Assembly: GCF_032444005.1 (NCBI RefSeq)
Contig: NC_091282.1
Coordinates: 72,354,001-72,418,000, forward strand
DNA length: 64,000 bases
DNA from: Ranitomeya imitator
Lineage: Eukaryota
Direction of reading: 5' to 3'
Shown piece after piece: positions 24 to 64,000 of this stretch; the stretch's first letter is position 1; every line of letters begins with the position of its first letter. The notes under the pieces are model-generated. The model was not told the DNA's origin and ran no database searches. It saw only the letters and a program-made list of their open reading frames with translations. Both the position numbers and the translations under genes were made by a program.

Positions 24-617
24 TATTCCAAGTGCTACATTCCGCACCATTGAACTTATTTTTTTATATCTTGAGATTCACGCATGACTGTCGGCAATAC
101 TTAGAAAGTGGTTTGTGCTAATTGTATGTCTGATTAATAAAGGTCCAGCCCAGGTCCCGGACCAGGGCAGCGATTAATCTGTCGTTCTACAGCCATGATT
201 TCATTGCTTATTCTTGGTTTGCAAGCAGTTTACCTAGTTTGTGCCGGCGAGCACCTCTTGTGCAACATCTTACCACATGACAGTGACCTTCATCGTTTGG
301 TGGCTTTTGCACTTTATTGGGTAATGCACATTGTGTGTAGTTGCCAGCCAAACATTCGTGTTCAAAGTTATTGCCAAGAATTCATATAATTAATAACCAA
401 TAGATAAAAAGGAATAAAAGATTACAGAAATGAATACTACAATACTTCTGCTAAAAACACCATACTACATATCCAGCAATGTAGTAACCTCTATAACAAT
501 ACTACCTCTGTATGAGGAATACAAAATCTTAATATAGTGCCGATAGTGGTGCTCGGCTAATTGCCCAAACCACTCATCGCAATAGCTGTGGATATACTCC
601 CACCAGATTGTAGACAA

Positions 618-799
618 GCAAGAGAGAACAGAGTAATACATCCACCATGGAGTAAATTTATCACAAAATTTCATTATAAATAAAACAAAACAAAAAAAGC
701 ACTTACATATTAATGGCATAATTGTCAAGTGACAGAATTATAGCAAGGGAAACCAGGCGCAGCAAAGGTACAAACTCCACTAAAACAGTGCAAGAGGTA
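618..799 (+). repeat. Left arm of ~180-bp inverted repeat flanking the 244-bp array
   Basis: gcaagagagaacagagtaatacatccaccatggagtaaatttatcacaaaa...actaaaacagtgcaagaggta is the reverse complement of 1900-2075, with scattered mismatches. Confidence 0.9.
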
Positions 800-957
800 C
801 TATGCTGACGTGACCACACTGGGTTTTGGATCCATCATTGCACTGTCACTTTATTTTGATATGGATGGAGGTATTTGTCCAAAACTTAACATTAGGCCAC
901 AACCTAGTCACATAATATTAATCCTCTTACCCATGGCTGTAAGGAGTGCCGCACACG

Positions 958-1002
958 CCACCCCGACGCGCGTTTTGCGTGGGCTTCTTCCAGGGCTAGT
1001 GT
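958..1002 (-). ncRNA. Minimal type-I hammerhead ribozyme-like motif, unit 1 (G12A, extra G in core; probably inactive)
   Basis: Minus strand reads CC-CUGGAAGA-A-GC-CCAC-GC-AAAAC-GCGC-GUC-GG. The conserved GAAA is mutated to AAAA. Confidence 0.45.
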
Positions 1003-1201
1003 TCAGTTTTGGACAAATATCTCACTTGATGATACACTGTATCTATGCTGACCTGACCACACTGGGTTTTTAGATCCATCATTGCACTGTCACTTTATTT
1101 TGATATGGATGGAGGTATTTGTCCAAAACTGAACATTAGGCCACAACCTAGTCACATAATATTAATCCTCTTACCCATGGCTGTAAGGAGTGCCGCACAC
1201 G

Positions 1202-1246
1202 CCACCCCGACGCGCGTTTTGCGTGGGCTTCTTCCAGGGCTAGTGT
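1202..1246 (-). ncRNA. Minimal hammerhead-like motif, unit 2 (G12A, extra G in core)
   Basis: Same motif sequence as unit 1. Confidence 0.45.
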
Positions 1247-1445
1247 TCAGTTTTGGACAAATATCTCACTTGATGATACACTGTATCTATGCTGACCTGA
1301 CCACACTGGGTTTTTAGATCCATCATTGCACTGTCACTTTATTTTGATATGGATGGAGGTATTTGTCCAAAACTGAACATTAGGCCACAACCTAGTCACA
1401 TAATATTAATCCTCTTACCCATGGCTGTAAGGAGTGCCGCACACG

Positions 1446-1490
1446 CCACTCCGACGCGCGTTTCGCGTGGGCTTCTTCCAGGGCTAGTGT
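1446..1490 (-). ncRNA. Minimal type-I hammerhead ribozyme-like motif, unit 3
   Basis: Minus strand reads ACACUAGCC-CUGGAAGA-A-GC(CCAC)GC-GAAAC(GCGC)GUC-GGAGUGG. It has the GAAA box, a GUC cleavage triplet (predicted cut 1453/1452), a 2-bp stem II, a palindromic stem III (ACGCGCGU) and stem I CC/GG + CACU/AGUG. The core has one extra G versus CUGANGA. Confidence 0.6.
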
Positions 1491-1689
1491 TCAGTTTTGG
1501 ACAAATATCTCACTTGATGATACACTGTATCTATGCTGACCTGACCACACTGGGTTTTTAGATCCATCATTGCACTGTCACTTTATTTTGATATGGATGG
1601 AGGTATTTGTCCAAAACTGAACATTAGGCCACAACCTAGTCACATAATATTAATCCTCTTACCCATGGCTGTAAGGATTGCCGCACACG

Positions 1690-1734
1690 CCACTCCGACG
1701 CGCGTTTCGCGTGGGCTTCTTCCAGGGCTAATGT
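1690..1734 (-). ncRNA. Minimal type-I hammerhead ribozyme-like motif, unit 4
   Basis: Same core as unit 3, with intact GAAA and GUC. Confidence 0.6.
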
Positions 1735-1899
1735 TCAGTTTTGGACAAATACCTCACTTGATGATACACTGTATCTATGCTGACCTGACCACACTGGGTT
1801 TTTGGATCCATCATTGCACTGTCACTTTATTTTGATATGGATTGGACCCATTACTGCATTGTCACTTTATAGTGATATGTATGGAAACAAAAATATCCT

Positions 1900-2075
1900 T
1901 ACCTCTTGCACTGTTTTAGTGGTGTTGTACTTTTGCTGCACCTGTTTTCTCTTGCTATAATTCTGTCACTTGGCAATTATGCCATTAATATGTAAGCGCC
2001 TTTTTTGTTGTAATTATAATTCTATTTTGTGATAAATTTACTCCATGGTGGATGTATTACTCTATTCTCTCTTGC
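1900..2075 (-). repeat. Right arm of ~180-bp inverted repeat flanking the 244-bp array
   Basis: tacctcttgcactgttttagtgg...gatgtattactctattctctcttgc is the reverse complement of 618-799. Confidence 0.9.
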
Positions 2076-2156
2076 ATAGCTTCTGTATAATAAGTCCTGA
2101 AGGACAATGAATAGAATTCTCACCATACGCCATGCCAATGAACCATGTCACACACA

Positions 2157-2245
2157 GTGCCCTGGCCTATGTTTCGTGTAATGCTTCATCAGGGGGTCCC
2201 CTCATTCAGGGCTGACTAAGCAATATGCGAAACATGTCAGGGTAC
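2157..2245. ncRNA. Head-to-head pair of degenerate minimal hammerhead motifs
   Basis: The minus strand at 2195-2157 reads CUGAUGA-AGCAUUACAC-GAAAC-AUAGGC-CAGGGCAC. The plus strand at 2208-2245 reads CUGACUA-AGCAAUAUGC-GAAAC-AU-GUC-AGGGUAC. The two arms are diverged reverse complements. Confidence 0.5.
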
Positions 2246-3059
2246 TAGGCAGTGGGTATTATAAAGTCCTTATAACCAAGAATCTGTAATAGAAGCATTG
2301 TAATCATTATCTGTGTAGTCTTTTCTACCTTTTACTCACCTAGTCACTGTTGTATTTGCATTGATAGGTTTTGTATTATGCTATTGTTGGACCCCTATAA
2401 TGTGACCACACTGCCTTAATGTGTTTTTTGATGTGGCGATTTTAAATTTTTGTGGGCAGCTCTTCAGTATGAATTATTTTATGTTAACACAGTTGTAAAT
2501 TCTTTATAATCATGTTAATATTTAAAACAATTTTTCAGTCATAAAAACATTGTAGACATAACAGAAATTTCTATGTCTTGCAACCAGAGGCGGACACCAC
2601 GCAGAGGGCCTCTTGCTGCTAAATTGCACAATTCTACGGTTGTGGCCACTTGTGGTTTTCACATTGTGGCCATGATCCAATATACCAATTGGTCTGGTTA
2701 TAACTAGGAGACAGGATGAAGAGATTTTCACCCTCCTTTCCTATGCTTTCAGTTAATATAAGCAATAGTTTGCAATACCTATATACTGAATGATAGTTTA
2801 AATTACTGGTTATCATTAGGTACAGTGTAGGGTTTTCTAGGGCTGATTAGGGACAGCTACTGTGGAGCGGGGGCGCCATTTCTCAATTTTATCTAGGGTG
2901 CCAACCTCAAGCTGTCAGGTAGTTTTAAGGATAGGGATGCATTAGTATCTCAATAGGGATCAGCTTTAATTTGTATACGTTTTGTGTTCTTTTATTAAAT
3001 ATCAAATAAAGTAATTGTTTTTAGGGTTTTTTTCTGTTACAGCCCCGTCCTATTAGCTG

Positions 3060-8463: not shown

Positions 8464-10446
8464 GGCATTTGTCATTTTTGGGTTTATCATCATCTCAACT
8501 AAAAAATTGCTGAGTTTGTGAAAAGTGACTTAAACAAGTATCCGGATGTGGCAGGTGAACCATGAAAAAGATCAGCCTAATCCAATTTCTGAAAGAATAT
8601 TTAAGATCTGCTCTGAAGAGCTGCATAAATGAAAAAAAACCCTCAATATTTTGTAGTGTAAAGTAAAAATAATAATTTAAGACACCAGTCACATGAAGGT
8701 TCAGAGGAGCGCATGAAAAAAAGGGGCTAATTTTAATTTGCATGGTCATCAGCATTTCACCCCTGCGTCATTCTTACGTCTGTATGAAATCCATGCAACA
8801 TCCATTTTTATACATCAGCAGGTAAGAAAATAATTTCAAGACCGAATCTATTTCCCTATGTTAATGATAGAAACTGTAGAAGTAAAAATCAGTTGCAATG
8901 CGGAAAAACATGGGATCAGATTTCTTTTGCGCACCAATAGACATGTTGAGCGAGTATCATCCAATACGCGGAAAATTATAGTCCATGCTGATATTTTTCC
9001 CACACGGACACTTAGGTCTGTGAAAAAAATTTTTATTTTTTTTTTAAAAACAACCCCATAGAGTTACATTGTTCCGAGTGCTGTCTGTTTGGTATCCAAT
9101 TTTGACAAGGACACCGCATCTACCATATAATTGTCTAAGGGGTACTTCCGTCTGTCCTTCTGTCACGGATATTCATTGGTCGTGGCCTCTATCATGGAAA
9201 TCCAAGTCGCTGATTGGTCGCCGCAAAACAGCCACGACCAATCAGCGACGGGCACAGTCCGGAAGAAAATGGCCACTCCTTACTCCCCGCAGTCAGTGGC
9301 CGGTGCCCGCTCCATACTCCCAGCTCCCCGCAGTGTCCCCGGCGCCCGCTCCATACTCCCAGCTCCCTGAAGTGTCCCCGGCGCCCGCTCCATACTCCCC
9401 GCAGTGTCCCCGGTGCTCCGCTATATACCCCCCGCAGTGTCCCCGGCGCTCCGCTCCATACTCCCCGCAGTCAGTGTCCCCGGCGCTCCGCTCCATGCTC
9501 CCCGCAGTCACTGTCCCCGGCGCTCTGCTCCATACTCTCCGCAGTCAGTGTCCGCTCCATACTCCCCGCAGTCACTGTCCCCAGCGTTCTGCTCCATACT
9601 CTCCGCAGTCAGTGTCCGCGGCGCTCCGGTCCATACTCCCCGCTCCATGCTTCCTGCAGTCACTGTCCCCGGCTCCATACTCCCCTCCGGTTACCGCTAA
9701 CACAGGGTTAATAGCGGCGGTAACGGACCGCGTTATGCCACGGGTAACGCACTCCGTTACCGCCGCTATTAACCCTGTGTGTCCCCAACCTTTTACTATT
9801 GATGCTGCCTATGCGGCATCAATAGTAAAAAAAAAAAGTAATGTTAAAAAAACCCAAAACCTGCTATACTCACCCTCCGTTGTCCGCTGAGGCGCTCGCC
9901 GCCATCTTCCTTTCCCAGCGATGCATTGCGAAATTACCCAGAAGACCTAGCGGTCTCGCGAGACCGCTAAGTCATCTGGGTAATTTCGCAATGCATCCTG
10001 GGAACGCAAGATGGCGGCAGCCGTGCGCCCATCGGCACAGAGCCGTTGGATCCCAGGAGGCCGAGAGACGGGACGCTGAGGAGCAGCGACCAGAATGGTG
10101 AGTATGTTAACCTACAAGGGGCCCTCGGATCGTTAGGTGAGTATGTTTATTTTTTAACCTGTGACATACGTGGCTGGGCAATATACGTCGCTGTGCAATA
10201 TACTACGTGGCTCTGTGCTGTATACTACGTCACTGGGCAATATACTACGTGGCTGGGCAATATACTACATGGCTCTGTGCTGTATACTACGTCACTGGGC
10301 AATATACTACGTGGGTGGACAATATACTACGTGGCTGGGCAATATACTACGTGGCTGGGCAATATTCTACGTGGCTGGGCAATATTCTACGTGGCTGGGC
10401 AATATTCTACGTGGCTAGGCAATATACTATGTGGCTGGGCAATATA

Positions 10447-12036
<1,590 letters not shown>

Positions 12037-17419: not shown

Positions 17420-19645
17420 TCAAGTATTGTCCAAGTGTGGAAGGTCCCGGTCTCTTTGTGACAGCTTTAGTAGAGCAGCAGGCTGGGCTACACTCAGCTC
17501 CATCTTGCTTTTCTTGCGCACAGAAGTAACCACTTCTCGTAATAAGTCAAAAATAAAGTCCTGGCTTTTGCGCTCATAAAGAGCTTTTACCACCAGAGAT
17601 TTACGGCCCCTGGGAAATTTGGCACAAAGTCTAGGGGCACCGACCGTTGTTGAGTCCTTTAGGGCTGCTTGGACTCTAGTTACATTTTGGTTATGATCCA
17701 ATATTGCTAGCTGGGTCCTGGCCACCATTTCGTCCATGTAAAAACGAAGCCGACTAGGTCGGTATTTTCGACATGTGCTATGGAAGATCTCCAGAGAGTC
17801 TGAATGGCAATAGAAGGATACACGCTTTAAGTCTCTCTGCACAGAAGGGCTGAGCACAATTTCTTTAAGTCTACGGTAGGCCAAGGAACCCTTCGAAAGC
17901 CACCTGGTAGGTTTGGAGCCTACATTGTGCTGGCACTTCCAGTAGTCAGAACTGGAACGCCATTCGTGCACATTATTAACATGGTACTGCAACGCATTCC
18001 AGCGATCCAACAACTCTTCTTTGTTTTCATCGCAGGTCTTCACACACCACCACAAGTGCGATTTGACGGGCAATGACCAATCCAAGAGGACTTCACAGTG
18101 TTTTTTCTTGGCCTGGAAAAGTATTTTATTATTAATGGATCTTGCCAAGTGCCAAGGGTCAACGCGGTGAACAATATTGCTATAACTATCCTTCATTATT
18201 TTCCTAACTCCGACGCCACGGTCGGTGGTTACCATTTTAACATTGACCCCTTTTTCTAAGACGCAATTCAGCGCTTTCTTAAATGTTATGTTTTTGTGGT
18301 GAGCTTGAGATAAACTGGGCAGATGTTGCTGTATGTGAAATCCAAGAATCTTTTTAGTTTCTGCATCCATCATGACACAGGTATAATACTTAGTCAAGTG
18401 GTCGGGTCGGGCGGCTTGGTAGTCCCCTGCCAGGCATACGGGCTTCTCTCTAAGGCGGGTTATAATAGACTGCTGCTCCATGAGCCAGTGACGATTTAAG
18501 GTTGGAAACAAATGTGTTAACTGGTTTTTGTAATAGGTGGATTTTTTGACAAATTTCAAGTTCAACAATTTTACCATTTGAAGAATTTTGAGGAAACTTG
18601 TGCCGCTATATAAGACAGCAGCTGATGCCAAAACATCCCCCAATGGTTGTTTGCCCAGTCTTGGCTGGCTCTCCCATATGGTTTTGGTGTGGCCGCTTGC
18701 ACATTTGACTTCTACAATTACAGATGACCCCACGAAGCTCTTTCGAACATGTGTTACACGATCCTCACATTTACTCTGTGCCTGACATGGTATCATCCCA
18801 ATAAGTTTATTAAGGCAACTTTCAAACACTATAAACTTTTTGTCACGGACGGGACTCTTGGGACCCTCGTAGATGCATCTGAATTCTTCGTTATGGGTTT
18901 CATCCTCTGCATCTTCATCGCTTTCAACGTAGAATGATTCTTCTTCCTCCTCTTCGTAGTCAGATTCATGAAAGGTACAATCAACACGTTTTGGGCATCT
19001 TCTATCCTTTAGACCTTTGTGACTACTTTCCACTCGAGTCTCATTTTGCCCTTGAAACATTCGTACTGACGTTTGAGTTTGTGCATGTTTTTTTCCAAAC
19101 TTTGGTGTCATTCCGATTCTCTCAGAATCTGTATTGGTACCTCGATCAACCACAACTTTCCACACCCTACTCGGTTCTGTGGAGATGGAAGATGGATTAT
19201 CAAAAAGCAGTGGATTATCCTCTCCTATTTGGATAGTATGGTATAATAAAGGTTTACTTGAGGTGGACGGACCTTGATCCGCCACAACCCGATAAGTCTG
19301 AGATATTTTTCTTTTTTTCCTCTTTGGACCATCTTCTTTTGGAATTACACAGTTTGGTGGTGTTCGGACAAATAGAGTTGGTATAGAATTTCTTTTCAAA
19401 GTTCGACGAAAACCATCGTTCATGTAACAATCATCAGTAAAATGCTTGGAACACATGCGATAGATATCAGAACTCTTTCCTACGATGATCTTTTCAACTG
19501 AGGCGTCCAAGTCGTTATCAAATTGACCAGTTTGCTGTAACCATTGCCTTATAATCATTGGGTTGTTTGGGAAGGAGTGCATAATGATGCCTGTACCTCT
19601 GGACTTCCATGTGTAACCACATCCTTTAACGATACATGAAGGCAT
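17420..19645 (-). CDS. THAP-domain / Kolobok-type DDE transposase-derived protein (741 aa), candidate domesticated gene
   Basis: Uninterrupted ORF. N-terminal THAP C2CH (MPSCIVKGC...MCSKHF...SIPTLF), acidic linker, C..C..C..GH finger, LAGD, TTDR, DPWH, HLWWC, LEIFHS..KY.P.R and LAILDHNQN match Kolobok transposase motifs as I recall them. A splice acceptor (ttacag|G) lies 11 nt upstream of the ATG. Confidence 0.88.
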   Translation of the reverse strand: MPSCIVKGCGYTWKSRGTGIIMHSFPNNPMIIRQWLQQTGQFDNDLDASVEKIIVGKSSDIYRMCSKHFTDDCYMNDGFRRTLKRNSIPTLFVRTPPNCVIPKEDGPKRKKRKISQTYRVVADQGPSTSSKPLLYHTIQIGEDNPLLFDNPSSISTEPSRVWKVVVDRGTNTDSERIGMTPKFGKKHAQTQTSVRMFQGQNETRVESSHKGLKDRRCPKRVDCTFHESDYEEEEEESFYVESDEDAEDETHNEEFRCIYEGPKSPVRDKKFIVFESCLNKLIGMIPCQAQSKCEDRVTHVRKSFVGSSVIVEVKCASGHTKTIWESQPRLGKQPLGDVLASAAVLYSGTSFLKILQMVKLLNLKFVKKSTYYKNQLTHLFPTLNRHWLMEQQSIITRLREKPVCLAGDYQAARPDHLTKYYTCVMMDAETKKILGFHIQQHLPSLSQAHHKNITFKKALNCVLEKGVNVKMVTTDRGVGVRKIMKDSYSNIVHRVDPWHLARSINNKILFQAKKKHCEVLLDWSLPVKSHLWWCVKTCDENKEELLDRWNALQYHVNNVHEWRSSSDYWKCQHNVGSKPTRWLSKGSLAYRRLKEIVLSPSVQRDLKRVSFYCHSDSLEIFHSTCRKYRPSRLRFYMDEMVARTQLAILDHNQNVTRVQAALKDSTTVGAPRLCAKFPRGRKSLVVKALYERKSQDFIFDLLREVVTSVRKKSKMELSVAQPAALLKLSQRDRDLPHLDNT

Positions 19646-28957: not shown

Positions 28958-31185
28958 TCAGGGCCACAGTCTCAAACATTACCATCAGTAACACAGTATG
29001 CCATCATGGATTAAATCCTGCAGGGCATATAAGGTCCCCCTGCTCACTCCAGCACATGTCCAGACCCATTTGAAGTTCGGCAATGACCATCTGAATGATC
29101 CAGAGGAGGCATGGGAGAAGGGCATGTGGTCAGATGAGACCAAGATAGAACTTTTTGATATCAACTCCACTTGCCATGTTTGGAAGAAGAAGAGGGACAA
29201 GTACAAACCCAAGAACACCGTTCCAACTGTGAAGCATGGTGGGGAAACATTATACTTTGGGTGTGGCTTTCCTGTAAAGAGGACAGGAGGAATGCATTGT
29301 ATTAAAGGGAGGATGGATGGGGTCATGTATTGCGAGATTTTGGCCAACAACCTCCTTCCCTCAGTAAGAACATTAAAGATGGGTCATGGTTGGGTCTTCC
29401 AGAATGACAATGACCTGAAACACACAGCCAGGGCAACTAAGGAGCGGCTCCGTAAGAAGCATTTCAAGGTCCTGGAGTGGTCTAGCCAGTCTCCAGACCT
29501 GACCCCAATAGAAAATCTTTGGAGGGAGCTGAAACTCAATGTTGGCCAGCAACTGCACCGAAACCTGAAAGATCTGGAGATGATCTGTATGGAGGAGTGG
29601 GCCAAAAATCCCTGCAGCACTGTGTGCAAACTTGGTCAAGAACTACAGGAAATGTCTGACCTCTGTAATTGCAAACAAAGGTTTCTGTACCAAATATTAA
29701 GTTCAGATTTGATCAGATGTGGAGAAGAGGAAGAATAAAACAGTCTGTGAAAATCGCATCTCACTCGGATGTCTTCTCAGTGAGGTGCGACATTTTCATG
29801 GACTTGAATGGCCGAGTGCGATCCAATTTATGGAGGCAAATTGTGCATGTGGCAACATGTTTTGCCTCAGAACACCTGGACGGCGCCATAGTGTAACATT
29901 GATCTGAGTGCAATCAGTGTCGGATCGCACTCAGAATGGAAATATGGTTGTGTGTACGAGCCCATACTGTGCGGCACCATAGCTGTAAACATGGTCACCT
30001 GGTTAGGGACCCCCACACTAAGCCCAACCCCTAGCTACGTCTCTGCTCGACCTTAGTATTTTTTCATCATTTTTTTTAAATAAATTAGAACATGTACGAT
30101 ACCTGCCTACATACAGATCTGCCATGTGGCATGGGGCTAATGTTGGGTGGTCCTTCTATGTGGACATATAAAGAGATCTGGCTGGCACTAGCAAAGAAAA
30201 CAATTGGCACCACAACCACAAAACACAAAGTAAAAAAAAAAAGTTTATGCTTTATTAACTTCTTTGACAAACAGGATTAAAACAGATTTCACAGTATGAG
30301 AATTGCATTGGCAGCAGGAGAGGAGACAGCTCGTACGACAAATAGTACATCATCAGTGACTGCAGCGGTAATATCCACAGCACACACATCAGGATGGTGC
30401 AGGAGGCAAAAAAGGCAGAAAGTGTGAAGCTAAATAATGCAGACTGGGGGGAAATACATACCCAGATGTTCTCTGCTGTGATGGCAATTGCTCTCGTGCT
30501 TTTTGTTCACCTTGGGGTGTCGCCATCTCGGCAGGAAAGCGCTGCTATGCCCTATACTGCCGCATGTGTGCCCGCTAATAAGACCAGCACACCTGGGTGC
30601 CCGTGCGATGCCGCGCCCGACGCCAAGCACATGACCTGTGTCAATGCAGCCCTACAGTCAGAGGCCCAGTAGGAGTGCGACGCTCAGGACCGCGCATGTG
30701 CACCATGCCCGACTACACCATTCATTCCACCATAATCCACTTTTTTTAAGGTTTTCATTTTGACCTGGCAACACAATTCTCCAGATCACTACAATTACAA
30801 TATTTTTTAATATATATTAAAACACACTATAATGAGTTAAAAGAAATGGAGAACTTTGCAAAAAAAATAAAAAATGTATAACTACGGTATGTCTCGATGA
30901 TGGAGCTGTGTCACAGCTTGTTTTTTGTCGATTTTTATACCATTTTGGGGTGCATACGATGTTTTGAGAATTTTTTTTTCTCCGGTTTTTAGAGGGGAAA
31001 AAAAACAGCAATTCTGAAGCTTCACCTTTTTTTCCGTCCCGATGTTCACCTTATGGAATAAGTTATTTTATATGAGTGCGCGTGTTAACGCTCCACGTTT
31101 TGCTACTTACATTTCTACAAAAATGACAATGATTTAAGCATATATATTATTTTACATTTTTTGCCACTTTTCATCAGACCACTTA

Positions 31186-32870: not shown

Positions 32871-33311
32871 CATGTCGACGAGATCTAGCTGGAAATTGGT
32901 TTCTCTGTTGCTGGCGGAGAGTTTTGCGCTTGTTAGCGTCGGTTAAAAAAGTTGAGCAACTGCTGAGGGTTCTGCTAGGCCATGTTGAGGACTGGCCGGA
33001 GGGGACAGTACTGTCTACTAAATGTGGGGGAGGAGGGCTATGGAGGGTACTGTAAATTGGTTTACTATTTTTCTTATATGTCATAGAAGTGCAATGTTAA
33101 GTTATAATAAAGTTAAAGTTAGGGGAAATTATGTTTAGTGTGGCAGTGGGACGCGAATGGAGAGGGTTAAGTGAGGGAGAGTGTTCGCAGTGGAGCCCCA
33201 CTCTTGCTGAGAGGAAGAATGCGTTACACTGGGGGGGTTAGGGGGGTAAGTTGGGAGGGGGCAGGGGGGGTGGGAGGGGTGGGGCAGCTCATACTTGGGA
33301 AATTGGATACT

Positions 33312-36300
33312 ATGAGAAATGATGAGCCACAGGGGGGGGGAGATTGTATTAAAATATTGAGTTGGAATGTGAGAGGTCTGGCGGATAAAACACGGCGAGC
33401 GGCAAGTCTACAGTATGTCCGAGAACAGAAGGTCTCAATGATATGTCTGCTGGAAACACATTTAGTGCGGGAGAGGGTGAACGTATTGAATAGGCGCTGG
33501 ATACAGAGGGCGTATCACTCTACTTTCTCGACGTACTCTAGGGGGGTGTCTGTGTTGATTCCTACTGGGGTGCAGTATGAGGAGGTAGCGGTAAAGGAAG
33601 ATGTGGATGGTCAGTATGTGGTGGTGAAATGTAAAATGAATGGAGTATTGATGTGTATAGTGGCAATGTATATTCCGCCCCCATACTCAAGCAAGAAGAT
33701 AAGAGAGGTGCTGGAGAGGGTAGAGCGCTGGGGACCGTTACTATTACTAATTATCGGCGACCTTAATAATATATGTGATGACTTTGGGATAAGAACAAAA
33801 ACCCCCAGAATAGGACGGCGGGACATATCACTACGTTTGGGACTTATGTCGGGGAAGTGGGCATGGTTGATTTATGGAGAGTTAGGCATGTCGGGGAAAG
33901 GGCGTATTCATGCTACTCACCAGCTCATGGTACGCTGTCTAGGATTGATCTGGCACTGGGTAACCGATTACTAGATACGATGGTAGGGGAGGTGAGATAT
34001 TTGCCTAGGGCTCTCTCAGACCATAGTCCAGTTGAAGTGGAATTTCGACCAGTGGGGACACGGAACGGGAGCAGAAGGGAGTGGAAAATTCACCCTAATT
34101 GGCTACACAGCATAGACTTGGAGAAGATTAAGAAGGAATTGGTGGAATATTTTGAGATAAATGAGGGAAGTGTAGACGTGCTTACTGTGTGGGAAGCCAT
34201 GAAGGCGTACTTGAGAGGGCTGTTTAGGGATATTAGCAGGTGTAAGCGGAAATCGAGAGAGGCAGAGAGGCTGGCGATAGATGGGCTGAGGGTGGCTGAA
34301 GATGAGATGGTAATAATGGGTACTCTGGAGGCTGGGAGGAGGTTAAAAGCGGCTCAAAACCAGCTAGAGGCGGTCTTGCTGAGTAAGGCTGAAAGGAAGA
34401 GGGAATTCATGAATCTGGCCTATTATCAGGAGGGTGAATCAGTGGGTCATTTGATGTCGCTGGTGGCATCTGCCCAGAGAAATACTTCCTTTGTTCACTC
34501 TCTGGTGACTGGGAGTGGTGTTACTGTTTCGGAGACTTCAGAGATTTTGGAGACTTTTGCAGATTTTTACGCAGACTTATACTCCTCTCGGGTAGATGGG
34601 TCAATGGAGGACACGGTGGCGTTCCTTGAGGAGTTGGAGCTCCCGAGGCTGAGTGACAGGGATAGGGAGGATTTGGAGGCTCCCATTACGGAGGAGGAAC
34701 TGGGACGGGCATTGCAGTCGATGGCTAATGGGAAGGCGCCTGGCGTAGACGGATTTCCTGCCGAAATTTATAAAAACTTGGGGGAAGTGTTGATCCCTAA
34801 ATTGAAGGTGGTCTTGGAGGAGGCTAGGAATGGCGGAAGGCTGCCGGCATCTATGAGGGAGGCCACAATAGTGGTAATTCCAAAGGAGGGGAAGGACCTG
34901 ACACAGCCGGACTCATACCGACCAATTTCTTTACTTACTATCGACGTTAAACTCCTGGCTAAGGTGTTGGCGATGAGGTTGACAAGTGTTATTTCTGGCC
35001 TGATACACTCAGATCAATCTGATAGGTCAACTGCGATCAACTTGCGAAGGCTGTATGTGAACTTGCAACTCAGAGCTGATAACTGTGGCCAGAGAGTTAT
35101 TGCATCTTTAGACGCTCACAAGGCGTTCGATAGTGTGGAGTGGGGATATCTCTGGCAGGTGTTGCGAAGAATGGGGTTTGGACCGCAGTTCATATCATGG
35201 ATTCAATTAATGTACTCGATGCCGATGGCCAGGGTTAGGGTAAACGGGGAGTTGTCACGGACCATACAATTGGCTAGAGGGACGAGGCAGGGATGTCCGC
35301 TCTCCCCCCTTTTGTTTGCTCTAGCAGTGGAACCGCTGGCCGCTACGCTTCGACGATCTGATGAGATGACGGGATTTAAATATGGGGTGATTGAAGAAAG
35401 GGTGGCGTTGTATGCGGATGATATTTTGTTGTTTCTGGCTGATCCAGTTGCATCCTTGGAGGGAGCCATTGGGATTATTGAACGATTTGGATCAGTGTCT
35501 GGGCTTAGGATAAATTGGAGTAAGTCTATCTTGTTTAAGGTGGCTGGAGGTGACGAGTAAATTTAAGTACCTGGGAATATGGGTATCTATGCCGGTAACT
35601 GATTATATACATGAGAATCTGACTCCAATCTTGGGTGCCCTCAAGGCAAAAGCGGATGCTTGGCTTAAGCTGCATTTGTCTGTGGTAGGTAGGGTGAATC
35701 TTATCAAAATGATTCTGATGCCGAAAATACTGTATATTCTTCACAATGCGCCGGTTTGGATACCACGTGGGAAATTTAGACAGATCAACTCTCTGTTTAG
35801 GAATTTGATTTGGGGGAGGCAGCATCCGCGTATCAAACTGGAGACACTTCAGCGACCCAAGGATGATGGGGGTCTGGCATTGCCTAACCCTGAGTTGTAC
35901 TTTCTTGCAGCCCAGAGTCAGCATCTAAGGGGCTGGGCGCATGAAGGGTCATCTGGAGCGGTACAGCGGTTGATGGAGGTGGTGACAAAAAGAAGGCCAG
36001 TGGTACAATGTTTGGAGGATGGATCCTTGGAGAGTTTGGGGAAGCTATATCTGACTTTGCTGTTGATACGCAAGCTGTGGAGTAGATTGAGGCACATACG
36101 TGGGATCACGGACTTGACTAGATACTCGCCGATATGGCATAATAACAATCTGAAAGAATTTGAGGCATTAGGGGTACTGATAGAGTGGTTGGGCAAAGGG
36201 ATTCAGTATGGGTACCAAATAATTGAACAAGGTGAACTGAAATCATTTCCCAATTGCAGGCGGAATTTGGCCTTGGGACTGCAGGGGAGTATCAATATTT

Positions 36301-41500: not shown

Positions 41501-44500
41501 GGAACTGCACCCGGAAAAGACACCGAACATCCCTATAATCTAAAATTGGCCAGATGTGCGCAAAAAAAAAACCGTTATTCTGCCCACATGAGCGGTAATG
41601 GTCACCATATTGGTTAACTCCCTGGTAGAAACATATCCCAACGTTATGTCTATGTAATATATGAAAATACAGTTTAAAGTGGTGGTCCAGATCAAGAAAT
41701 AGTGTCTTTAAATATGATTATTATAGCAAGATAAACAACTTACTCATACATTTCCAAAGATGTCCCAATGTATCAGCGTCAGGTGCAAATAAGGGTATAA
41801 TAGGGACAACTTGGAATTTTGGTTTCCTACCTCTCGGGAGTTTATTGGGGTCTGATAATCCCATTGTATAGACACATCTCTCATGTATTTTGCAATTGTG
41901 TGTTTCAGGTAGTAATTTAATAAACGTTATGTATTTTATGGGTTCAATATATGTTAATCTTGGTAGTTTTCTTTCTTCATCAGATGCTACAGAGAAGTGG
42001 GCTGGCTTAGCTATTGGAATGAGCCAGCCCCCTTCAAATGGTGACAAAAGGAACGCTGGAGAGAGTGAAGGACAAGTGAAAGGTTTAATTACAGGAGATA
42101 AGACACTGTGTCAGCACCTAAAAAGCAATTAGAGGGAAAGGGGACTGACTGCGCATTTCCAGAGCTAGGACACCCCTTCTCTTCTAATCAATGGGACATA
42201 AAGGAGAAGAGGGCTGTCTCGGCTACGGAAATGAGATAGCCGGTCATGCCCCGTTCCTTACAGATAGTGGGAGCGCTTGTGTTAATAATCACATTTAAAA
42301 AGAGAACTGTTTTAAGCTGGACAATCCCTTTAAATTCAGCAAATCCAGTAGCCACAATGCTGAACTCTATGATTACTTACCAACGCCGTCACTGTAAAGA
42401 TTGGCGACATGTCCGTGGATGTGCAAGATAACGAAGGCCTCCAATAAGAGCAGCAGGAAGGCCGGGGTCAGCCTCTCGCTGTGCAGCAATATCAGGAGCA
42501 GAGTCAGGATAGACAGGGTGATCACCATGCTGGCGGAGTACACACTGCCCAGACCATAGGCCTCAACCGCCGCTCCACTCTTCCTCTCCTCGCCTTCGCG
42601 CCCGTGCTGGAGGCGGCTCTTCAGCGTGCGCTGCATTTTCCTGTAGATCTGGGGGATTACGTGCTGCAGTTCAGCTGCAGAGCCAGGAGCTCCGCGGTAA
42701 GTGGTTACTGTGTGGTCATCATCAGAGGCCTTGCTCTTCACATAGACTGTCATAGGGCTCCACAAAGCCAGGAGGAGGCCCAGGCCGGCCATGGCGTAGA
42801 TAGCTCTGGGACAGGCCACCAGAGCGAGCTGTGTGAGCTCCCGCAGCTTGGCGAGACTATCCTCTGTCCCTGCGTTCAGGGCCCAGTAGCAAGCAATTCC
42901 TAGAACGATAAGAGAAAGGCCCCAGCGGACAAACAGCACCAGGGGAGAGGAGCTGTTCAGGTTTCCATAATGTTGCAGCCACTTTCTGATGAGGAAGACC
43001 ATGAAGCCAAGACACACGACACAGAAAACGTAGCAGAAGTTCTTCATCTGAGGGTCCTGAACGCTGGAGAGGGGGGACAGGAAGGAGGACGGCTGACAGT
43101 CTGGAGTCTCCTCCCGGCAATTATGGAAAAGTCCAGACAGACGAACAATAATTCCCAGTGCTGCCAGTAACCACATAAGTCTTGTGCCATCCTTCCTGTA
43201 AGCCGGGGTCAGGGAAGCTTTCCAAGACTCGCTCCCTAGAGGGGTAAACGTTGGCAGCGCTAGTTTGCCATCCCAATGTAGCTTCACCACGGTCACCGAG
43301 AGCAGAGACGTGAGAAGGAAAGGTGCCACGTACCCTTCCGCCACCACGTAACTGTCTGAAAACAAGGAACAGCAGCGGAAAAAAAGCACCACACAAGGGC
43401 CGGACAGCAGGAGATAAAACGGACGCGTCCTCCATCGCATCTGTGAACACTTCCTTCTCTGAAAGCTGAAGTAAAAACTGATCTGGGAAACCACAGTGGC
43501 TGCGGCACAAAGAGTTACTAGATCAAGAGCCACCAGGGACATCCATGTAGCCAGGCCCAGCACGGCAGTAACCATTAAAGAAGAGAGAAAAGGATATCCT
43601 AGAAGACACTTGTAAGGCAAAGCGACAGCTGCCCCAGCCTCTGCGATAATGTAACAGAGGAAACAGGAGGCCAGCAGGATGACGCAGCCCACGAGCATCT
43701 GTACAGGGTGGAAGCGAGCCCACGACTCCATGCAGACACTCCTGACTTGGGTCAGGTAGTCCTGGAGCCCGAGTATAGTCTTCTGCAGATGAGCGTCCAT
43801 CTCTTCCTCAGGCAGCTGATCCCACTGTGACAGAAGCTGCTCATATTCTGCTGTCAAGGAGGAAAACAGATCCGCCAAAGCGCGCAACTTCTCAGCGGGC
43901 AGGTCCCCCGCAACTCGAGAATAGGAGTCCAAGTAGCGAGCCACCTAAGAGAGAAAGAAAACGGCGGATGTAGGAAACAGATTCTCAACAAGTAGCCATC
44001 AGAAGGAAAATACAAGCCCCAGAGAGCAGTCAGAATGGGGTATTCTGGCTATAAATGAATTTGTGACCAGTAAAGCCGCTTGTCAGCAGGTGCATTAATG
44101 AAGAGAGCAAAACGCTAAGACTTTAACCTGACCAGGCTTAAAGTGCATTATCAGATGTAGCCCCCCTCAACACTTTCGGTATTTGCCAAGCAGGGCTGTG
44201 GAGTCGGTAACCAAACCTCCGACTCCACGACTCTGACTCCATAATACCAGGGCTGTGGCGTCGGTAAACCAAACCTATGACTCCTCAATTTCCATGACAC
44301 CGACTCCACGACTCTGACTCCCTGATACCAGGGCTGTGGAGACGGTAAGCCAAACCTCCAACTCCACAATTTCTATGACACTGACTCCGACTCCACGAAT
44401 CTGACTCCCTGATACCAGGGCTGTGGAGTCTGTAAACCAAACCTCCGACTCCTCAATTTCCATGACACCGACTCCACAACTCTGACTCCTTGATACCAGG

Positions 44501-47500
44501 GCTGCGGAGTCGGTAAGCCAAACCTCCGACTCCTCAATTTCCATGACACCGACTCCACAACTCTGACTCCTTGATACCAGGGCTGCGGAGTCAGTAAGCC
44601 AAACCTCCGACTCCACAATTTCTATGACACTGACTCCGACTCCACGACTCTGACTCCTTGATACCAGGGCTGTGGAGTCGGTAAACCAAACCTCCGACTC
44701 CTCAATTTCCATGACACCGACTCCACCAAAATGAGCTCCGACTCTGACTCCACAGCCCTGCTGCCAAGCCCATAAGAGAGTCTACAGAAGGGCTCACTGA
44801 AGGGTGAGATAAAAGCACACGCTGCACAAGGTGTGAATGTAGTATCTGCGGCCGTCAGGGCATACTATGCCAGCTGGTCTAAGGCTAGAATATCTTGTTG
44901 TAGTCTTGAATGCTTTTTTGCTTTCCATAATATTTCTTTCAGGATTTAGTCTTAGTTATGGCATTTAAGCATTACTATAATAAAAGGGTAGAGAAATGCA
45001 GGCAAACATGGGCAGCAGACACTATAGGAATATACACAGAGTATAAACGTACCTGCTGGGCATTGAGGTAGTAAGCGCTGGTCTTTGATAACTTATCTTC
45101 AGGGAACCCAAAGAGGTCGTCAATAACAGCTCCCAAGTTACTGTACGGAATGGGAAGACCGAGAAGCAGCGACAGGCTCGGCACCAGGTTCACTTGAGGA
45201 ACTGCTGCAGGGTCCTGAGAAATAAAAGTACTGTTCGCACGTTCTCTCCCGATGGGGTGATATTACTCATTATCTGCTACATGTAGTGTTAACCCTGCCC
45301 TAAAGTAATACCCTGTGTAGCTGGTCACCAAACAGAGGGGCCTTGCTGTACAAGAAGAGCGCTGCTGTCACTTCCTGCTCACTGTCTCCTCCGTGGTCTC
45401 CGGTGTCTGTCATCCCATGGTCTCCGGCCACCACCAGCAGCGTCCTGTCATCCAGATGCTCGATGAGTGACCTGTGGAACAAGACCACAACTTCTGTTAC
45501 CAGATATTCAGAACATCTGCAACATTTATTGTCGGTGATGGACCCAAACATTGGATCCTGGGGTCTGGAGAAAGTCTTAGAATATCTCAAATAGCAGATT
45601 CATTAAAATGTAACACAAGCAGCATAAAAAACAGTTGTGCTCACGTGATGACTTGATTCATCTGCATCAGTTTCTTGGCAGTCTCTGGGTGGTCCGGACC
45701 ATGCTTGTGCCCGCAATGATCAACACCAAGAAAATGGGCGATGACTACATCCCAGTCTCCTTCATCCACTGTTCAGACAAATCACAAGGTGTCTGGTTTA
45801 GAGAAGACGTCCTCCATTATAGAGCGAAGAACAGCTCCACACACAGGTTATTGTTGTGGAGGATTCAGAAGGCGAGTGGGCTACATGGACCGACAGATTA
45901 TCTCTAAGGTGCCATGTAAGGCTATGTTCACATGGGGCATTATTGCTATGTTTTCTGCATGCAAAACCTGCTCTCTTGGCAGTAAAGAATCTGCTTACAA
46001 AAAGCCTGTCCGACTAGTTTCCTGTGCACCTCTGTCCTCAGCGACTTAAATTATGCTTTATCCTAATACACAGCAGCATTTCAGATTACAGATAGCTCCT
46101 AAACTATGAAGACCAATGCTGACTACTCAATCCTCATAGCCCCTAGGGGTGTTTAAATGTAAAATGTGATTTTAACGTTGCACTCAGCTCCTCATGGCTG
46201 TGGTTGGGGAAGAACCAAAGGACCTACTTCTCTGCTCCAACGATCAGTGGGACTCATTCAGGCTGGTGATACTGGTGATTTTGTACGTTTTTACGTGTAT
46301 TAATATTATCAAAGCCTAACTCATGGGATCTGATGATGAGTTCTTCTTATATACCTCAATAATATATCACAAGATTTTTGGGGGCATTTCCCCTTGAAAT
46401 GTTTTCCTCAGACCAAATCTATTGACTATAATACAACCATTGCAGAACAAAAACATAAAGACGATGGGAGAATAGAAGAAGGTAAAACGGAAAACACTTT
46501 TTTTTTACCATATCTACAGGAGAGCAACTGACCTCCACCTTCCATGATCTGATCACGAAAAATGAAAATGTCCGACCCTAAAAGCTAAAATATTCATATA
46601 ATGTCACTCACCGGTTGGGTACAGATGCCGTAAGATCCCGTCATCCACAGTATGCAGATCCTTTACATTGAAGGATGGGAAGAAATAAGACTTGTAGAAC
46701 TTTCTGGGGAACAGCCCGTCCCAGGTGTCGTCCCCCATGAACACCACTCTCTTCCCTGTAAGTCAAGGACAGTAGCTCAGTGACGGCATAGTCATACCTT
46801 TCCAGAATATATTACATCTTACAATGGTAATTGGAGGGTAAATGGAAAGACATGCCAGAACCTAAAAAACAGAGGGATCAGGGAGCAACAACCATCCACT
46901 AATCTCCAGAACAAAAAAGATACAACTCTAAAGAGTGTACAGAGCTGATCACCGCTGATCGGTGGGGTCACAGACTTTAGACCACCACCAACCTATTTTA
47001 AGGTTCAGTCATTTATATCAAAGAGTGTACAGCCCATTTAAGTGCTATGTCCATCGTAATATTACCGTAATATACTGTCTATGGCCCATATTCAGCTCTC
47101 AGGACCAGAGCAGAATTATGAATGAAAATATCCCAGTGACAACACGCACCGTTTTGTACCATCTGATGGATCAAGTTGTCCTCCTGAATGGCATAACTGG
47201 CAAAGTTGCTACCCACATCCACAAACGTCGGCAGTGAACCAGTGGTGAATCCTTTAATCCTCTGCATGGTGGTGGTCGGAGGGTCTGCCCGAAAAGGGTA
47301 AAGCCTGGCATGCTGCGGTTGTGAAGCAGTGAGCTGGTGGATCACTCCCAGCTTGTTCTCATATGGCTTCGGGATGGCGTTTGCTGGGTTGTATCGGGCA
47401 AAGTCGTATTTGAGAGCATCGATAATGACTATAACGGCCTTATCAAATCTCTGCGGGAACCAACAGGGGCCGGCGTGGGGGTGGAGAGCAGGAGACGGCG

Positions 47501-47856: not shown

Positions 47857-48628
47857 CCTATGTGACGTAGACGGCAGAGTCTCAGCGTCTCCTATGAGAC
47901 GTAGACGGCAGAGTCTCAGCGTCTCCTATGTGACGTAGACGGCAGAGTCTCAGCGTCTCCTATGTGACGTAGACGGCAGAGTCTCAGCGTCTCCTATGTG
48001 ACGTAGACGGCAGAGTCTCAGCGTCTCCTATGTGACGTAGACGGCAGAGTCTCAGCGTCTCCTATGTGACGTAGACGGCAGAGTCTCAGCGTCTCCTATG
48101 TGACGTAGACGGCAGAGTCTCAGCGTCTCCTATGTGACGTAGACGGCAGAGTCTCAGCGTCTCCTATGTGACGTAGACGGCAGAGTCTCAGCGTCTCCTA
48201 TGTGACGTAGACGGCAGAGTCTCAGCGTCTCCTATGTGACGTAGACGGCAGAGTCTCAGCGTCTCCTATGTGACGTAGACGGCAGAGTCTCAGCGTCTCC
48301 TATGTGACGTAGACGGCAGAGTCTCAGCGTCTCCTATGTGACGTAGACGGCAGAGTCTCAGCGTCTCCTATGTGACGTAGACGGCAGAGTCTCAGCGTCT
48401 CCTATGTGACGTAGACGGCAGAGTCTCAGCGTCTCCTATGTGACGTAGACGGCAGAGTCTCAGCGTCTCCTATGTGACGTAGACGGCAGAGTCTCAGCGT
48501 CTCCTATGTGACGTAGACGGCAGAGTCTCAGCGTCTCCTATGTGACGTAGACGGCAGAGTCTCAGCGTCTCCTATGTGACGTAGACGGCAGAGTCTCAGC
48601 GTCTCCTATGTGACGTAGACGGCAGAGT
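47857..48628. repeat. 34-bp minisatellite, ~22.7 near-identical copies, in PIGO intron 1
   Basis: Unit cctatgtgacgtagacggcagagtctcagcgtct with an exact 34-bp period from 47857 to 48605. One visible variant (unit 2). Confidence 0.97.
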
Positions 48629-63480: not shown

Positions 63481-63667
63481 ACTCTTGTTCAACGTTCAGG
63501 TTTTTCGTCTAAAGAAAATGAACTTATTAAAAGATTTCTCCCAACAGACAAGAATATGTGTCCGCATCCAGTCATGGGAACCTCAGGATACTGGTTTGAA
63601 AAATACAATTCAGACATAACCATTGATCATGTGTCCATGAGCTGTCCCCGTGTGTTTTCATTCTTGA

Positions 63668-64000
63668 GCAGAACAGTGAGTGCAGCTCTGGGGTATAATA
63701 CAGGATGTAACTCAGGATCAGTAATGTATGTACACAGTGACTGCACCAGCAGAATAGTGAGTGCAGCTCTGGGGTATAATACAGGATGTAACTCGGGATC
63801 AGTAATGTATGTACACAGTGACTGCACCAGCAGAATAGTGAGTGCAGCTCTGGGGTATAATACAGGATGTAACTCGGGATCAGTAATGTATGTACACAGT
63901 GACTGCACCAGCAGAATAGTGAGTGCAGCTCTGGGGTATAATACAGGATGTAACTCGGGATCAGTAATGTATGTACACAGTGACTGCACCAGCAGAATAG
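63668..64000. repeat. 81-bp tandem satellite running off the window end
   Basis: tgcagctctggggtataatacaggatgtaac recurs at 63681, 63762, 63843 and 63924. Confidence 0.95.

What the first reader, a model, noticed from the sequence alone, without database searches (positions are those of the whole stretch)
801..1885. 244-bp tandem array with one minimal hammerhead-ribozyme motif per unit: retrozyme-like locus
Seen: each 244-bp unit carries, on the minus strand, CC-CUG(G)AAGA-A-GC(CCAC)GC-GAAAC(GCGC)GUC-GG with a flanking stem I. Stem III is the palindrome ACGCGCGU. Known: minimal type-I hammerheads with a short stem II and palindromic stem III occur in Penelope-like element terminal repeats, newt satellite 2 and metazoan non-LTR retrozymes. 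They act as dimers across tandem units and release monomers that can circularise. Inference: a minus-strand transcript through this array could self-process into 244-nt linear or circular RNAs, so this may be a frog retrozyme family hidden as an ordinary satellite.
Basis: partly seen in the sequence, partly recalled or inferred. Interest (0 to 1): 0.82.

Follow-up and report, generated by a model that had tools for sequence, protein, structure and literature searches.

The report
Degenerate hammerhead-like module in frog repeat
A real 244-base tandem repeat in a frog genome carries, in each unit, a short CpG-rich piece that most likely descends from a hammerhead ribozyme of the kind found in frog jumping elements. 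Its catalytic core is off-pattern and partly mutated, so this copy is probably a dead relic, not a working self-cutting RNA.

Summary
The array is real: 800-1842, 244 bp x 4.3, units 96-99% alike. The motif is only partly as described. The 5' box is CUGGAAGA, not CUGANGA. Helix II has 2 bp. Helix I is 2 bp, a 2-nt bulge, then 4 bp. Units 1-2 read AAAA where G12, the general base, should be.

Rfam gives no hit at gathering or at E<=10 on 1.6 kb. On 66 nt alone, Hammerhead_1 is the only family listed, at 10.3 bits against a cut-off of 34. Near-misses of this quality occur about twice per window by chance.

Hammerhead ancestry is still likely:
- The 3' half, GAAACGCGCGUC, equals the Rfam consensus and a mussel retrozyme; 0.0009 expected per window.
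- All 8 CpGs of the unit sit in this module.
- In contigs of three species the ~35-nt module is by far the deepest part, with varied flanks. Read-outs suggest a 5-bp closing helix in relatives.

The array lies between older inverted ~180-bp arms (89.6% alike). Its ends are not at the predicted cut site, and no convincing target duplication was found. RNA was not shown.

Verdict: a hammerhead-derived relic amplified locally at DNA level. This scan already reported canonical 353/384-bp retrozymes elsewhere in this genome. Low interest.

The parts
800..1842 (.). Tandem array, 244-bp unit x 4.3 (units start at 800, 1044, 1288, 1532; partial fifth unit 1776-1842)
   Evidence: TRF; unit table; blastn; pairwise identities
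1843..1899 (.). Tail: diverged copy of unit positions 27-70 (40-bp duplication) plus 14 bases. It is contiguous with the right arm in contigs of another species.
   Evidence: contigs X7 records 16-18 and X1 records 5-7
618..799 (+). Left arm of the long inverted repeat. It is a member of a dispersed repeat family that runs on leftwards past 560.
   Evidence: 163 of 182 columns identical to the right arm; contigs crossing 617/618
1900..2075 (-). Right arm of the long inverted repeat
1451..1483 (-). Hammerhead-like module, unit 3: off-pattern 5' box CUGGAAGA, bulged A, 2-bp helix II, GAAA, palindromic helix III, GUC. Predicted cut between 1453 and 1452.
   Evidence: RF00163 10.3 bits (gathering 34)
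1695..1727 (-). Hammerhead-like module, unit 4, with the same letters as unit 3
963..995 (-). Hammerhead-like module, unit 1, with A at the G12 position (plus strand T976)
1207..1239 (-). Hammerhead-like module, unit 2, with A at the G12 position (plus strand T1220)
1112..1267 (.). Example of the 31-nt inverted repeat inside every unit (1112-1142 / 1237-1267), enclosing the 94-nt spacer that holds the module. As RNA it forms a long helix that takes up the 5' strand of helix I.
   Evidence: I3-I18; fold
2152..2250 (.). Right flank: two diverged, inverted copies of another hammerhead-like motif. The minus-strand copy has CUGAUGA and GAAAC. The plus-strand copy has helix II, GAAAC-AU-GUC and an off-pattern box.
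   Evidence: no hammerhead hit in Rfam

Best explanation
The locus is a young, locally amplified 244-bp tandem repeat. It lies between two older inverted copies (~180 bp) of a dispersed frog repeat. Each unit contains a ~35-nt CpG-rich module that most likely descends from a type-I hammerhead of the kind carried by Penelope-like elements and amphibian non-LTR retrozymes.

In this copy the motif is not a canonical ribozyme:
- The uridine-turn box has one nucleotide too many.
- Helix II has only 2 bp.
- Helix I is eroded.
- Two units have lost the general base G12.

A minus-strand transcript would mostly fold into the competing ACGCG/CGCGU hairpin and the 31-bp unit helix, and would not self-cleave appreciably. 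The array grew by DNA-level duplication (unequal exchange or slippage), not by insertion of a rolling-circle cDNA.

Shown: array, arms, motif letters, model scores, fold energies, high-copy module. Inferred: hammerhead ancestry, inactivity, mode of amplification.
For: Hammerhead ancestry:
- RF00163 is the only Rfam family listed on the 66-nt module, and its consensus 3' half GAAACGcgCGUC is identical to ours.
- The same 12-mer occurs in the mussel retrozyme construct. It is expected 0.0009 times per window.
- All 8 CpGs of the unit lie at unit positions 151-180.
- The module has the bulged nucleotide between 9 and 10.1, the G10.1-C11.1 pair and the palindromic 15.2-16.2 that are listed as non-descriptor hallmarks of PLE hammerheads.
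- In contigs of organisms A, C and D the module is the deepest part: about 1860 against 20-200 in X1. Many contigs match it alone. Loose ends beginning GGC, with A>G at 960/1204 and T>C at 1450/1694, imply a GCCCC...GGGGC closing helix in relatives.

Inactivity:
- The box CUGGAAGA fails the CUGANGA criterion.
- G12 is the general base and is A in units 1-2.
- The model score is 10.3 bits against a gathering score of 34.
- The hammerhead-constrained fold is -1.1 kcal/mol against an MFE of -16.5, a gap of 15.4. Published hammerheads give gaps of 4.5-11.8.
- Even canonical Xenopus retrozyme dimers cleaved in only 1 of 9 cases.

Local DNA amplification:
- Units are 96-99% alike, while the arms are 89.6% alike.
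- The array ends fall at unit positions 1 and 67, and the predicted cut is at 164/165.
- The right junction (arm, tail, unit) is shared with another species.
Against: - The descriptor and CM matches alone are at chance level, about 2 per window. Ancestry therefore rests on the 12-mer, the CpG cluster and the contig depth.
- The letters of the relatives were not seen directly. 171 substitution rows and 23 indel rows were hidden.
- The off-pattern box seems shared by most relatives, since alignments run through 990-995 without a listed deletion. That is odd for a dead motif and could mean the module is kept for a function.
- Gene conversion could make units look younger than the arms.
Confidence: 0.6

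Rival explanations
1. One reading: an active, dimer-dependent minimal hammerhead. Minus-strand transcripts of the array cut themselves at each unit and give 244-nt linear or circular RNAs, which would make this a working frog retrozyme family.
For: - Tandem units of retrozyme size and GC content.
- A palindromic helix III that could pair between units.
- A bulged A and a G10.1-C11.1 pair, as in PLE hammerheads.
- A high-copy conserved module in three species.
- An exact 163-nt contig of the array in a run guessed to be RNA (X3 record 12).
- Retrozymes and PLEs are reported elsewhere in this genome (unchecked notes).
Against: - One extra nucleotide inside the CUGA turn, and a 2-bp helix II.
- G12 is lost in two units.
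- No model hit near threshold.
- The imposed dimeric fold is -15.3 kcal/mol against a dimer MFE of -37.6. The monomer gap is 15.4 kcal/mol.
- The array ends are not at the cut site.
- No holder on record as RNA.
- 8 of 9 canonical Xenopus dimers were inactive in vitro.
Confidence: 0.07
2. An ordinary satellite inside a dispersed repeat. The hammerhead resemblance is chance, helped by a CG-rich palindrome.
For: - Near-miss motifs of this quality occur about 1.9 times per 128 kb in shuffles and twice elsewhere in this window.
- The Rfam score is 10.3 bits, E 7.9, even on 66 nt.
- The module folds best as a plain hairpin.
- Two of about eight variable sites among the units fall in the module, so the array shows no constraint.
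Against: - The exact 12-mer shared with the RF00163 consensus is expected 0.0009 times per window.
- Several independent hallmarks are in register: the bulged nucleotide, G10.1-C11.1, GUC and the closing helix in relatives.
- The module is the most abundant and most conserved part of the family across species, despite 6 CpGs.
- A second hammerhead-like inverted pair lies 80 bp beyond the right arm.
Confidence: 0.18
3. The module is kept for a function other than self-cleavage. It might be a structured recognition or priming site for a Penelope-like reverse transcriptase, or a promoter element. The family would then spread through RNA without needing a ribozyme.
For: - The off-pattern box and 2-bp helix II appear to be family-wide, yet the module is the conserved high-copy core with varied flanks.
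- It is closed by a 5-bp GC helix in relatives.
- The stable internal hairpin is an alternative structure.
- Retrozymes are thought to depend on PLEs.
Against: - No direct evidence of transcription or of retro-insertion hallmarks at this locus.
- No target duplication that survives the contig evidence.
- No PLE in the window.
- High depth could simply reflect recent bursts.
Confidence: 0.15

Closest known systems
Metazoan non-LTR retrozymes (Cervera and de la Pena 2020, PMC7229834; Li, Clavereau and Pollet 2026 preprint)
   Same: Non-coding tandem repeats of 150-450 bp with GC below 50%. One type-I hammerhead-like motif per unit with a short palindromic helix III. Found in an amphibian genome that also holds PLEs.
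   Different: The catalytic box is not CUGANGA, and helix II is 2 bp instead of about 4. There are no loop 1-loop 2 contacts, and two units lack G12. The array ends are not at the cut site, no target duplication was found, and the array is framed by older inverted arms. RNA was not shown.
Minimal hammerheads of Penelope-like element terminal repeats (Cervera and de la Pena 2014, PMC4209133)
   Same: [quoted passage not shown]
   Different: Helix II is 2 bp here, against 6-8 bp there. The 5' box has an extra nucleotide. No PLE reverse transcriptase or GIY-YIG gene, and no terminal-repeat context, was found in the window.
Rfam RF00163 Hammerhead_1 (newt satellite 2, Schistosoma and cricket type)
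   Same: The 3' half GAAACGCGCGUC is identical to the model consensus. It is the only Rfam family that aligns to the module.
   Different: The score is 10.3 bits against a gathering score of 34. The model has to delete CUG of the box and most of helix II.

Membership tests
Hammerhead ribozyme, type I | Conserved 5' box CUGANGA | tested here: not met
   All four units read CUGGAAGA, 8 nt. No canonical match anywhere in the window.
Hammerhead ribozyme, type I | GAAAY box with G12, and RUH at the cut site | tested here: inconclusive
   Units 3-4 have GAAAC and GUC. Units 1-2 have AAAAC, so G12 is lost. G12 is the general base.
Hammerhead ribozyme, type I | Covariance-model score at or above the family threshold | tested here: not met
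   No hit at gathering on the window, and none at E<=10 on 1.6 kb. 10.3 bits against 34 on 66 nt.
Hammerhead ribozyme, type I | Three helices around the core that can form | tested here: inconclusive
   Helix III is fine as a dimer (8-bp palindrome). Helix II has 2 bp, and helix I has 2 bp, a bulge, then 4 bp. The constrained fold is -1.1 kcal/mol against an MFE of -16.5.
Hammerhead ribozyme, type I | Self-cleavage | not testable with these tools
   Needs in vitro transcription or RNA end mapping.
Non-LTR retrozyme | Tandem non-coding repeats of 150-450 bp with low GC | tested here: met
   244 bp x 4.3, GC 45%. Only 70-87 aa ORFs, with no homologues found.
Non-LTR retrozyme | [quoted passage not shown] 2026 criterion) | tested here: not met
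   No unit has a complete canonical motif.
Non-LTR retrozyme | Insertion hallmarks: target-site duplication, or ends or junctions at the cut site | tested here: not met
   The array ends fall at unit positions 1 and 67, and the predicted cut is at 164/165. The only flanking direct repeat is 10 bp, at 607-616 and 2549-2558. It is contradicted by contigs of other copies that cross 617/618.
Non-LTR retrozyme | Linear and circular monomer RNAs | not testable with these tools
   No holder on record as RNA. All runs laid were contigs, which cannot show RNA ends.
PLE minimal hammerhead | Unpaired nucleotide between 9 and 10.1, a G10.1-C11.1 pair, palindromic 15.2-16.2 | tested here: met
   A, then GC...GC, then the palindrome ACGCGCGU. 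Criteria.
PLE minimal hammerhead | Long helix II (6-8 bp) and location in a PLE terminal repeat | tested here: not met
   Helix II has 2 bp. The large ORFs of the window are THAP/integrase-like, Tc1 and LINE (endonuclease plus RVT_1), with no PLE.

The most novel reading that the evidence does not exclude
The module with an 8-nt CUGGAAGA box and a 2-bp helix II is not a broken copy. On this reading it is the family-wide form, kept in very many copies in several frog species because it works. It could be a new hammerhead core variant that cleaves only in a dimer or with host factors, or a hammerhead-derived structure re-used as a recognition site by Penelope-like reverse transcriptases.
Probability: 0.08. 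Interest if true: 0.6.

Novelty: new member of a known kind. Interest (0 to 1): 0.25.

Why it matters
As it stands, not much. Hammerhead-bearing repeats and their decayed relatives are already described in amphibians, and this scan has found canonical ones elsewhere in the same genome.

The locus is a useful warning. A hammerhead-like string in a tandem repeat does not make a retrozyme, and near-misses of this quality arise about twice per 64 kb by chance.

One point deserves a look. The off-pattern module appears to be the most abundant and best conserved piece of a repeat family in three species. If that holds genome-wide, it would show either how hammerheads die while their carriers keep spreading, or that an unusual core is tolerated.

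Tried and rejected
- Rfam at gathering on the whole window, and at E<=10 on 600-2200, 2050-2700 and 2140-2262. No hammerhead was found; only noise such as snoRNA and miRNA-like hairpins.
- Fetching relatives through a 70-aa ORF that spans the module. No protein homologue was found.
- Pattern scans: viral contigs gave none. Metagenome contigs gave one GC-rich bacterial chance match.
- Full-text search for the 12-mer gave none. Supplements of the 2014 paper are not held. Supplements of the 2026 preprint hold primers only.
- The search of earlier findings by sequence was blank.
- Target duplication: ATTGTAGACA at 607-616 and 2549-2558 abuts the left arm. I rejected it as an insertion mark because contigs of other copies in two species run across 617/618.
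- DNA transposon with terminal inverted repeats: no matching target duplication at 617/2076, and the repeat family continues left of 618. Not supported.
- Canonical-looking site on the minus strand near 46021 (CUGAGGA ... GAAAC-UA-GUC): helices I and II do not form, so I judge it a chance match.
- Joints on opposite strands (645>2003 and others) arise because the two arms are inverted copies of each other. They are not rearrangements.

Full report
**Observation**

TRF finds one array at 800-1842, with period 244, 4.3 copies, 98% matches and no indels. Units start at 800, 1044, 1288 and 1532, and a partial fifth unit covers 1776-1842. Unit pairs share 235-242 of 244 columns. A diverged 40-bp duplication of unit positions 27-70 plus 14 bases (1843-1899) follows the array. 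No other copy of the unit exists in the window.

On the minus strand, units 3 and 4 read CC-CUGGAAGA-A-GC(CCAC)GC-GAAA-CGCGCG-UC-GG at 1483-1451 and 1727-1695. Units 1 and 2 have A in place of G12: plus strand T at 976/1220 against C at 1464/1708, a CpG-to-TpG change. Units 3 and 4 carry GGAG where units 1-2 and most relatives have GGGG in the 3' strand of helix I. Every unit therefore carries at least one change in the module compared with the state commonest in relatives (position 163), or with the state expected before CpG decay (position 177).

**Is it a hammerhead?**

The published criterion for the catalytic centre is CUGANGA / GAAAY / RUH (supplement of PMC7229834).
- The first box is not met: all units have 8 nt (CUGGAAGA).
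- Helix II has 2 bp.
- Helix I has 2 bp, a 2-nt bulge, then 4 bp.

Rfam gives nothing at gathering on the window and nothing at E<=10 on 600-2200. When only 66 nt are searched, the single family listed is RF00163 Hammerhead_1, at 10.3 bits (gathering 34, E 7.9). The model deletes CUG of the box. Scaled to the window, that score corresponds to about two chance hits.

My own descriptor gives the same picture. It asks for a box within one edit of CUGANGA, helices I and II of at least 2 bp, and a palindromic helix III. It finds 2 matches outside the array, and dinucleotide shuffles give a mean of 1.9 per 128 kb. The motif match on its own is therefore not evidence.

**Why I still think it descends from a hammerhead**

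1. The 3' half, GAAACGCGCGUC, is letter for letter the RF00163 consensus and the helix III region of the mussel retrozyme construct. Under a first-order Markov model of this CpG-depleted window (CpG o/e 0.57), it is expected 0.0009 times per window.
2. All 8 CpGs of the unit lie at unit positions 151-180, which is the module.
3. The module shows features that Cervera and de la Pena list as emerging beyond their descriptor in PLE hammerheads:
   - an unpaired nucleotide between 9 and 10.1;
   - a G10.1-C11.1 pair;
   - palindromic 15.2-16.2.
4. I laid Logan contigs of four runs on 560-2140: organism A twice, plus organisms C and D.
   - The ~35 nt at 961-995 (and their equivalents 1204-1239, 1448-1483 and 1695-1727) are by far the deepest part: all-contig depth about 1860 in X1, against about 20 for 825-930 and 206 for the exact contig 977-1110.
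   - Many contigs in all four runs match this stretch alone, with loose ends on both sides.
   - Most of the listed loose ends (6 of 10) behind 995, 1239 and 1727 begin with GGC or GGT.
   - The commonest other letters are A>G at 960/1204 and T>C at 1450/1694.
   - Read on the minus strand, relatives therefore carry GCCCC before the box and GGGGC after the cut site. That is a 5-bp closing helix exactly where helix I belongs. The window's copy has lost it.
5. About 80 bp beyond the right arm, at 2152-2250, lie two diverged inverted copies of another hammerhead-like motif. One keeps CUGAUGA and GAAAC. The other keeps helix II and GAAAC-AU-GUC. Neither scores in Rfam.
6. Unchecked notes of this scan report canonical 353/384-bp retrozymes and Penelope-like elements elsewhere in this poison-frog genome.

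**Why I think this copy does not work**

- The extra nucleotide sits inside the uridine turn.
- G12, the general base (PMC6155905), is missing in two units.
- The module alone prefers the hairpin ACGCG-AAACG-CGCGU, which pairs G12 (MFE -16.5 kcal/mol).
- The fold constrained to hammerhead helices reaches only -1.1 kcal/mol, a gap of 15.4. Published mussel and axolotl hammerheads treated the same way give gaps of 7.4, 4.5 and 11.8.
- A dimer with an intermolecular helix III and both helices II scores -15.3 kcal/mol, against a dimer MFE of -37.6.
- In the full 244-nt RNA, the 31-nt inverted repeat present in every unit forms a long helix that includes the 5' strand of helix I.
- In the 2026 preprint, only 1 of 9 canonical Xenopus retrozyme dimers cleaved in vitro.

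One caveat applies. Contig alignments mostly run through 990-995 without a listed deletion, so the extra G may be the family's usual state. However, 171 substitution rows and 23 indel rows were not shown, so I cannot be sure.

**Setting and origin of the array**

The array and tail sit between inverted arms at 618-799 and 1900-2075, which share 163 of 182 columns, or 89.6%. The arms are members of a dispersed repeat.
- Contigs about 10% divergent cover them in organisms A and C.
- Some of these contigs run on leftwards across 617/618 to 560 and rightwards to 2140.
- Others run from the right arm through the tail into the last unit as far as 1730.

The right junction is therefore ancestral, and the left junction (799/800) is the novel one.

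The units are much more alike than the arms. The array ends at unit positions 1 and 67, far from the predicted cut at 164/165. A 10-bp direct repeat (607-616 and 2549-2558) abuts the left arm, but the contigs crossing 617/618 speak against it. Contigs of organisms C and D also show fold-back variants of the unit built around the 31-nt arms (joints and records 22 and 24).

I read this as in-situ DNA-level amplification of a unit that belonged to a hammerhead-carrying repeat. I do not read it as a fresh retrozyme insertion.

**RNA**

No run on record as RNA holds the unit. X3, guessed to be RNA, has an exact 163-nt contig (1036-1198). Contigs cannot show transcription, strand or ends.

**Comparison and verdict**

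The locus works like, and probably descends from, the hammerhead repeats of PLEs and amphibian non-LTR retrozymes (PMC4209133, PMC7229834, the 2026 preprint). It fails their defining tests: the box, the model score, a complete motif in two consecutive units, and insertion hallmarks.

It is best filed as a degenerate, hammerhead-derived repeat. The kind is known, the interest is low, and one open point remains: the apparently family-wide off-pattern core.

Noticed in passing
window 2152-2250: Two diverged inverted copies of a second hammerhead-like motif, head to head. Each keeps canonical letters where the other has lost them. No Rfam hammerhead hit. It may be a decayed PLE- or retrozyme-type fold-back next to the array.
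   Followed up: partly
window 17420-19645 (minus strand): A 741-aa ORF with an N-terminal THAP domain (E 4e-13) and a weak integrase-core match (E 8e-4, below the Pfam cut-off).
   Followed up: partly
window 10804-11682 and 28998-29738: Tc1/Sleeping-Beauty-type transposase pieces: HTH_Tnp_Tc3_2, HTH_SB and DDE_3.
   Followed up: partly
window 33171-35560: LINE-type ORF2 in pieces: an Exo_endo_phos endonuclease followed by RVT_1 (E 3e-34). It is not a Penelope-like element.
   Followed up: partly
window 47857-48628, 56976-57342, 63667-64000, 44219-44726, 9276-9643, 10167-10447: Several other tandem arrays: 34 bp x 22.7 at 99%, 30 bp x 9.6, 81 bp x 4.1 running off the window end, 81/249 bp, 37 bp and 20 bp. 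None was examined.
   Followed up: no
window 607-616 and 2549-2558: An exact 10-bp direct repeat, ATTGTAGACA. The left copy abuts the outer end of the left arm. It could bound a 1.9-kb insertion, but contigs of other copies cross the left boundary.
   Followed up: partly
window 46021 region (minus strand): CUGAGGA ... GAAAC-UA-GUC with correct spacing but no helix I or II. Judged a chance hammerhead look-alike.
   Followed up: partly
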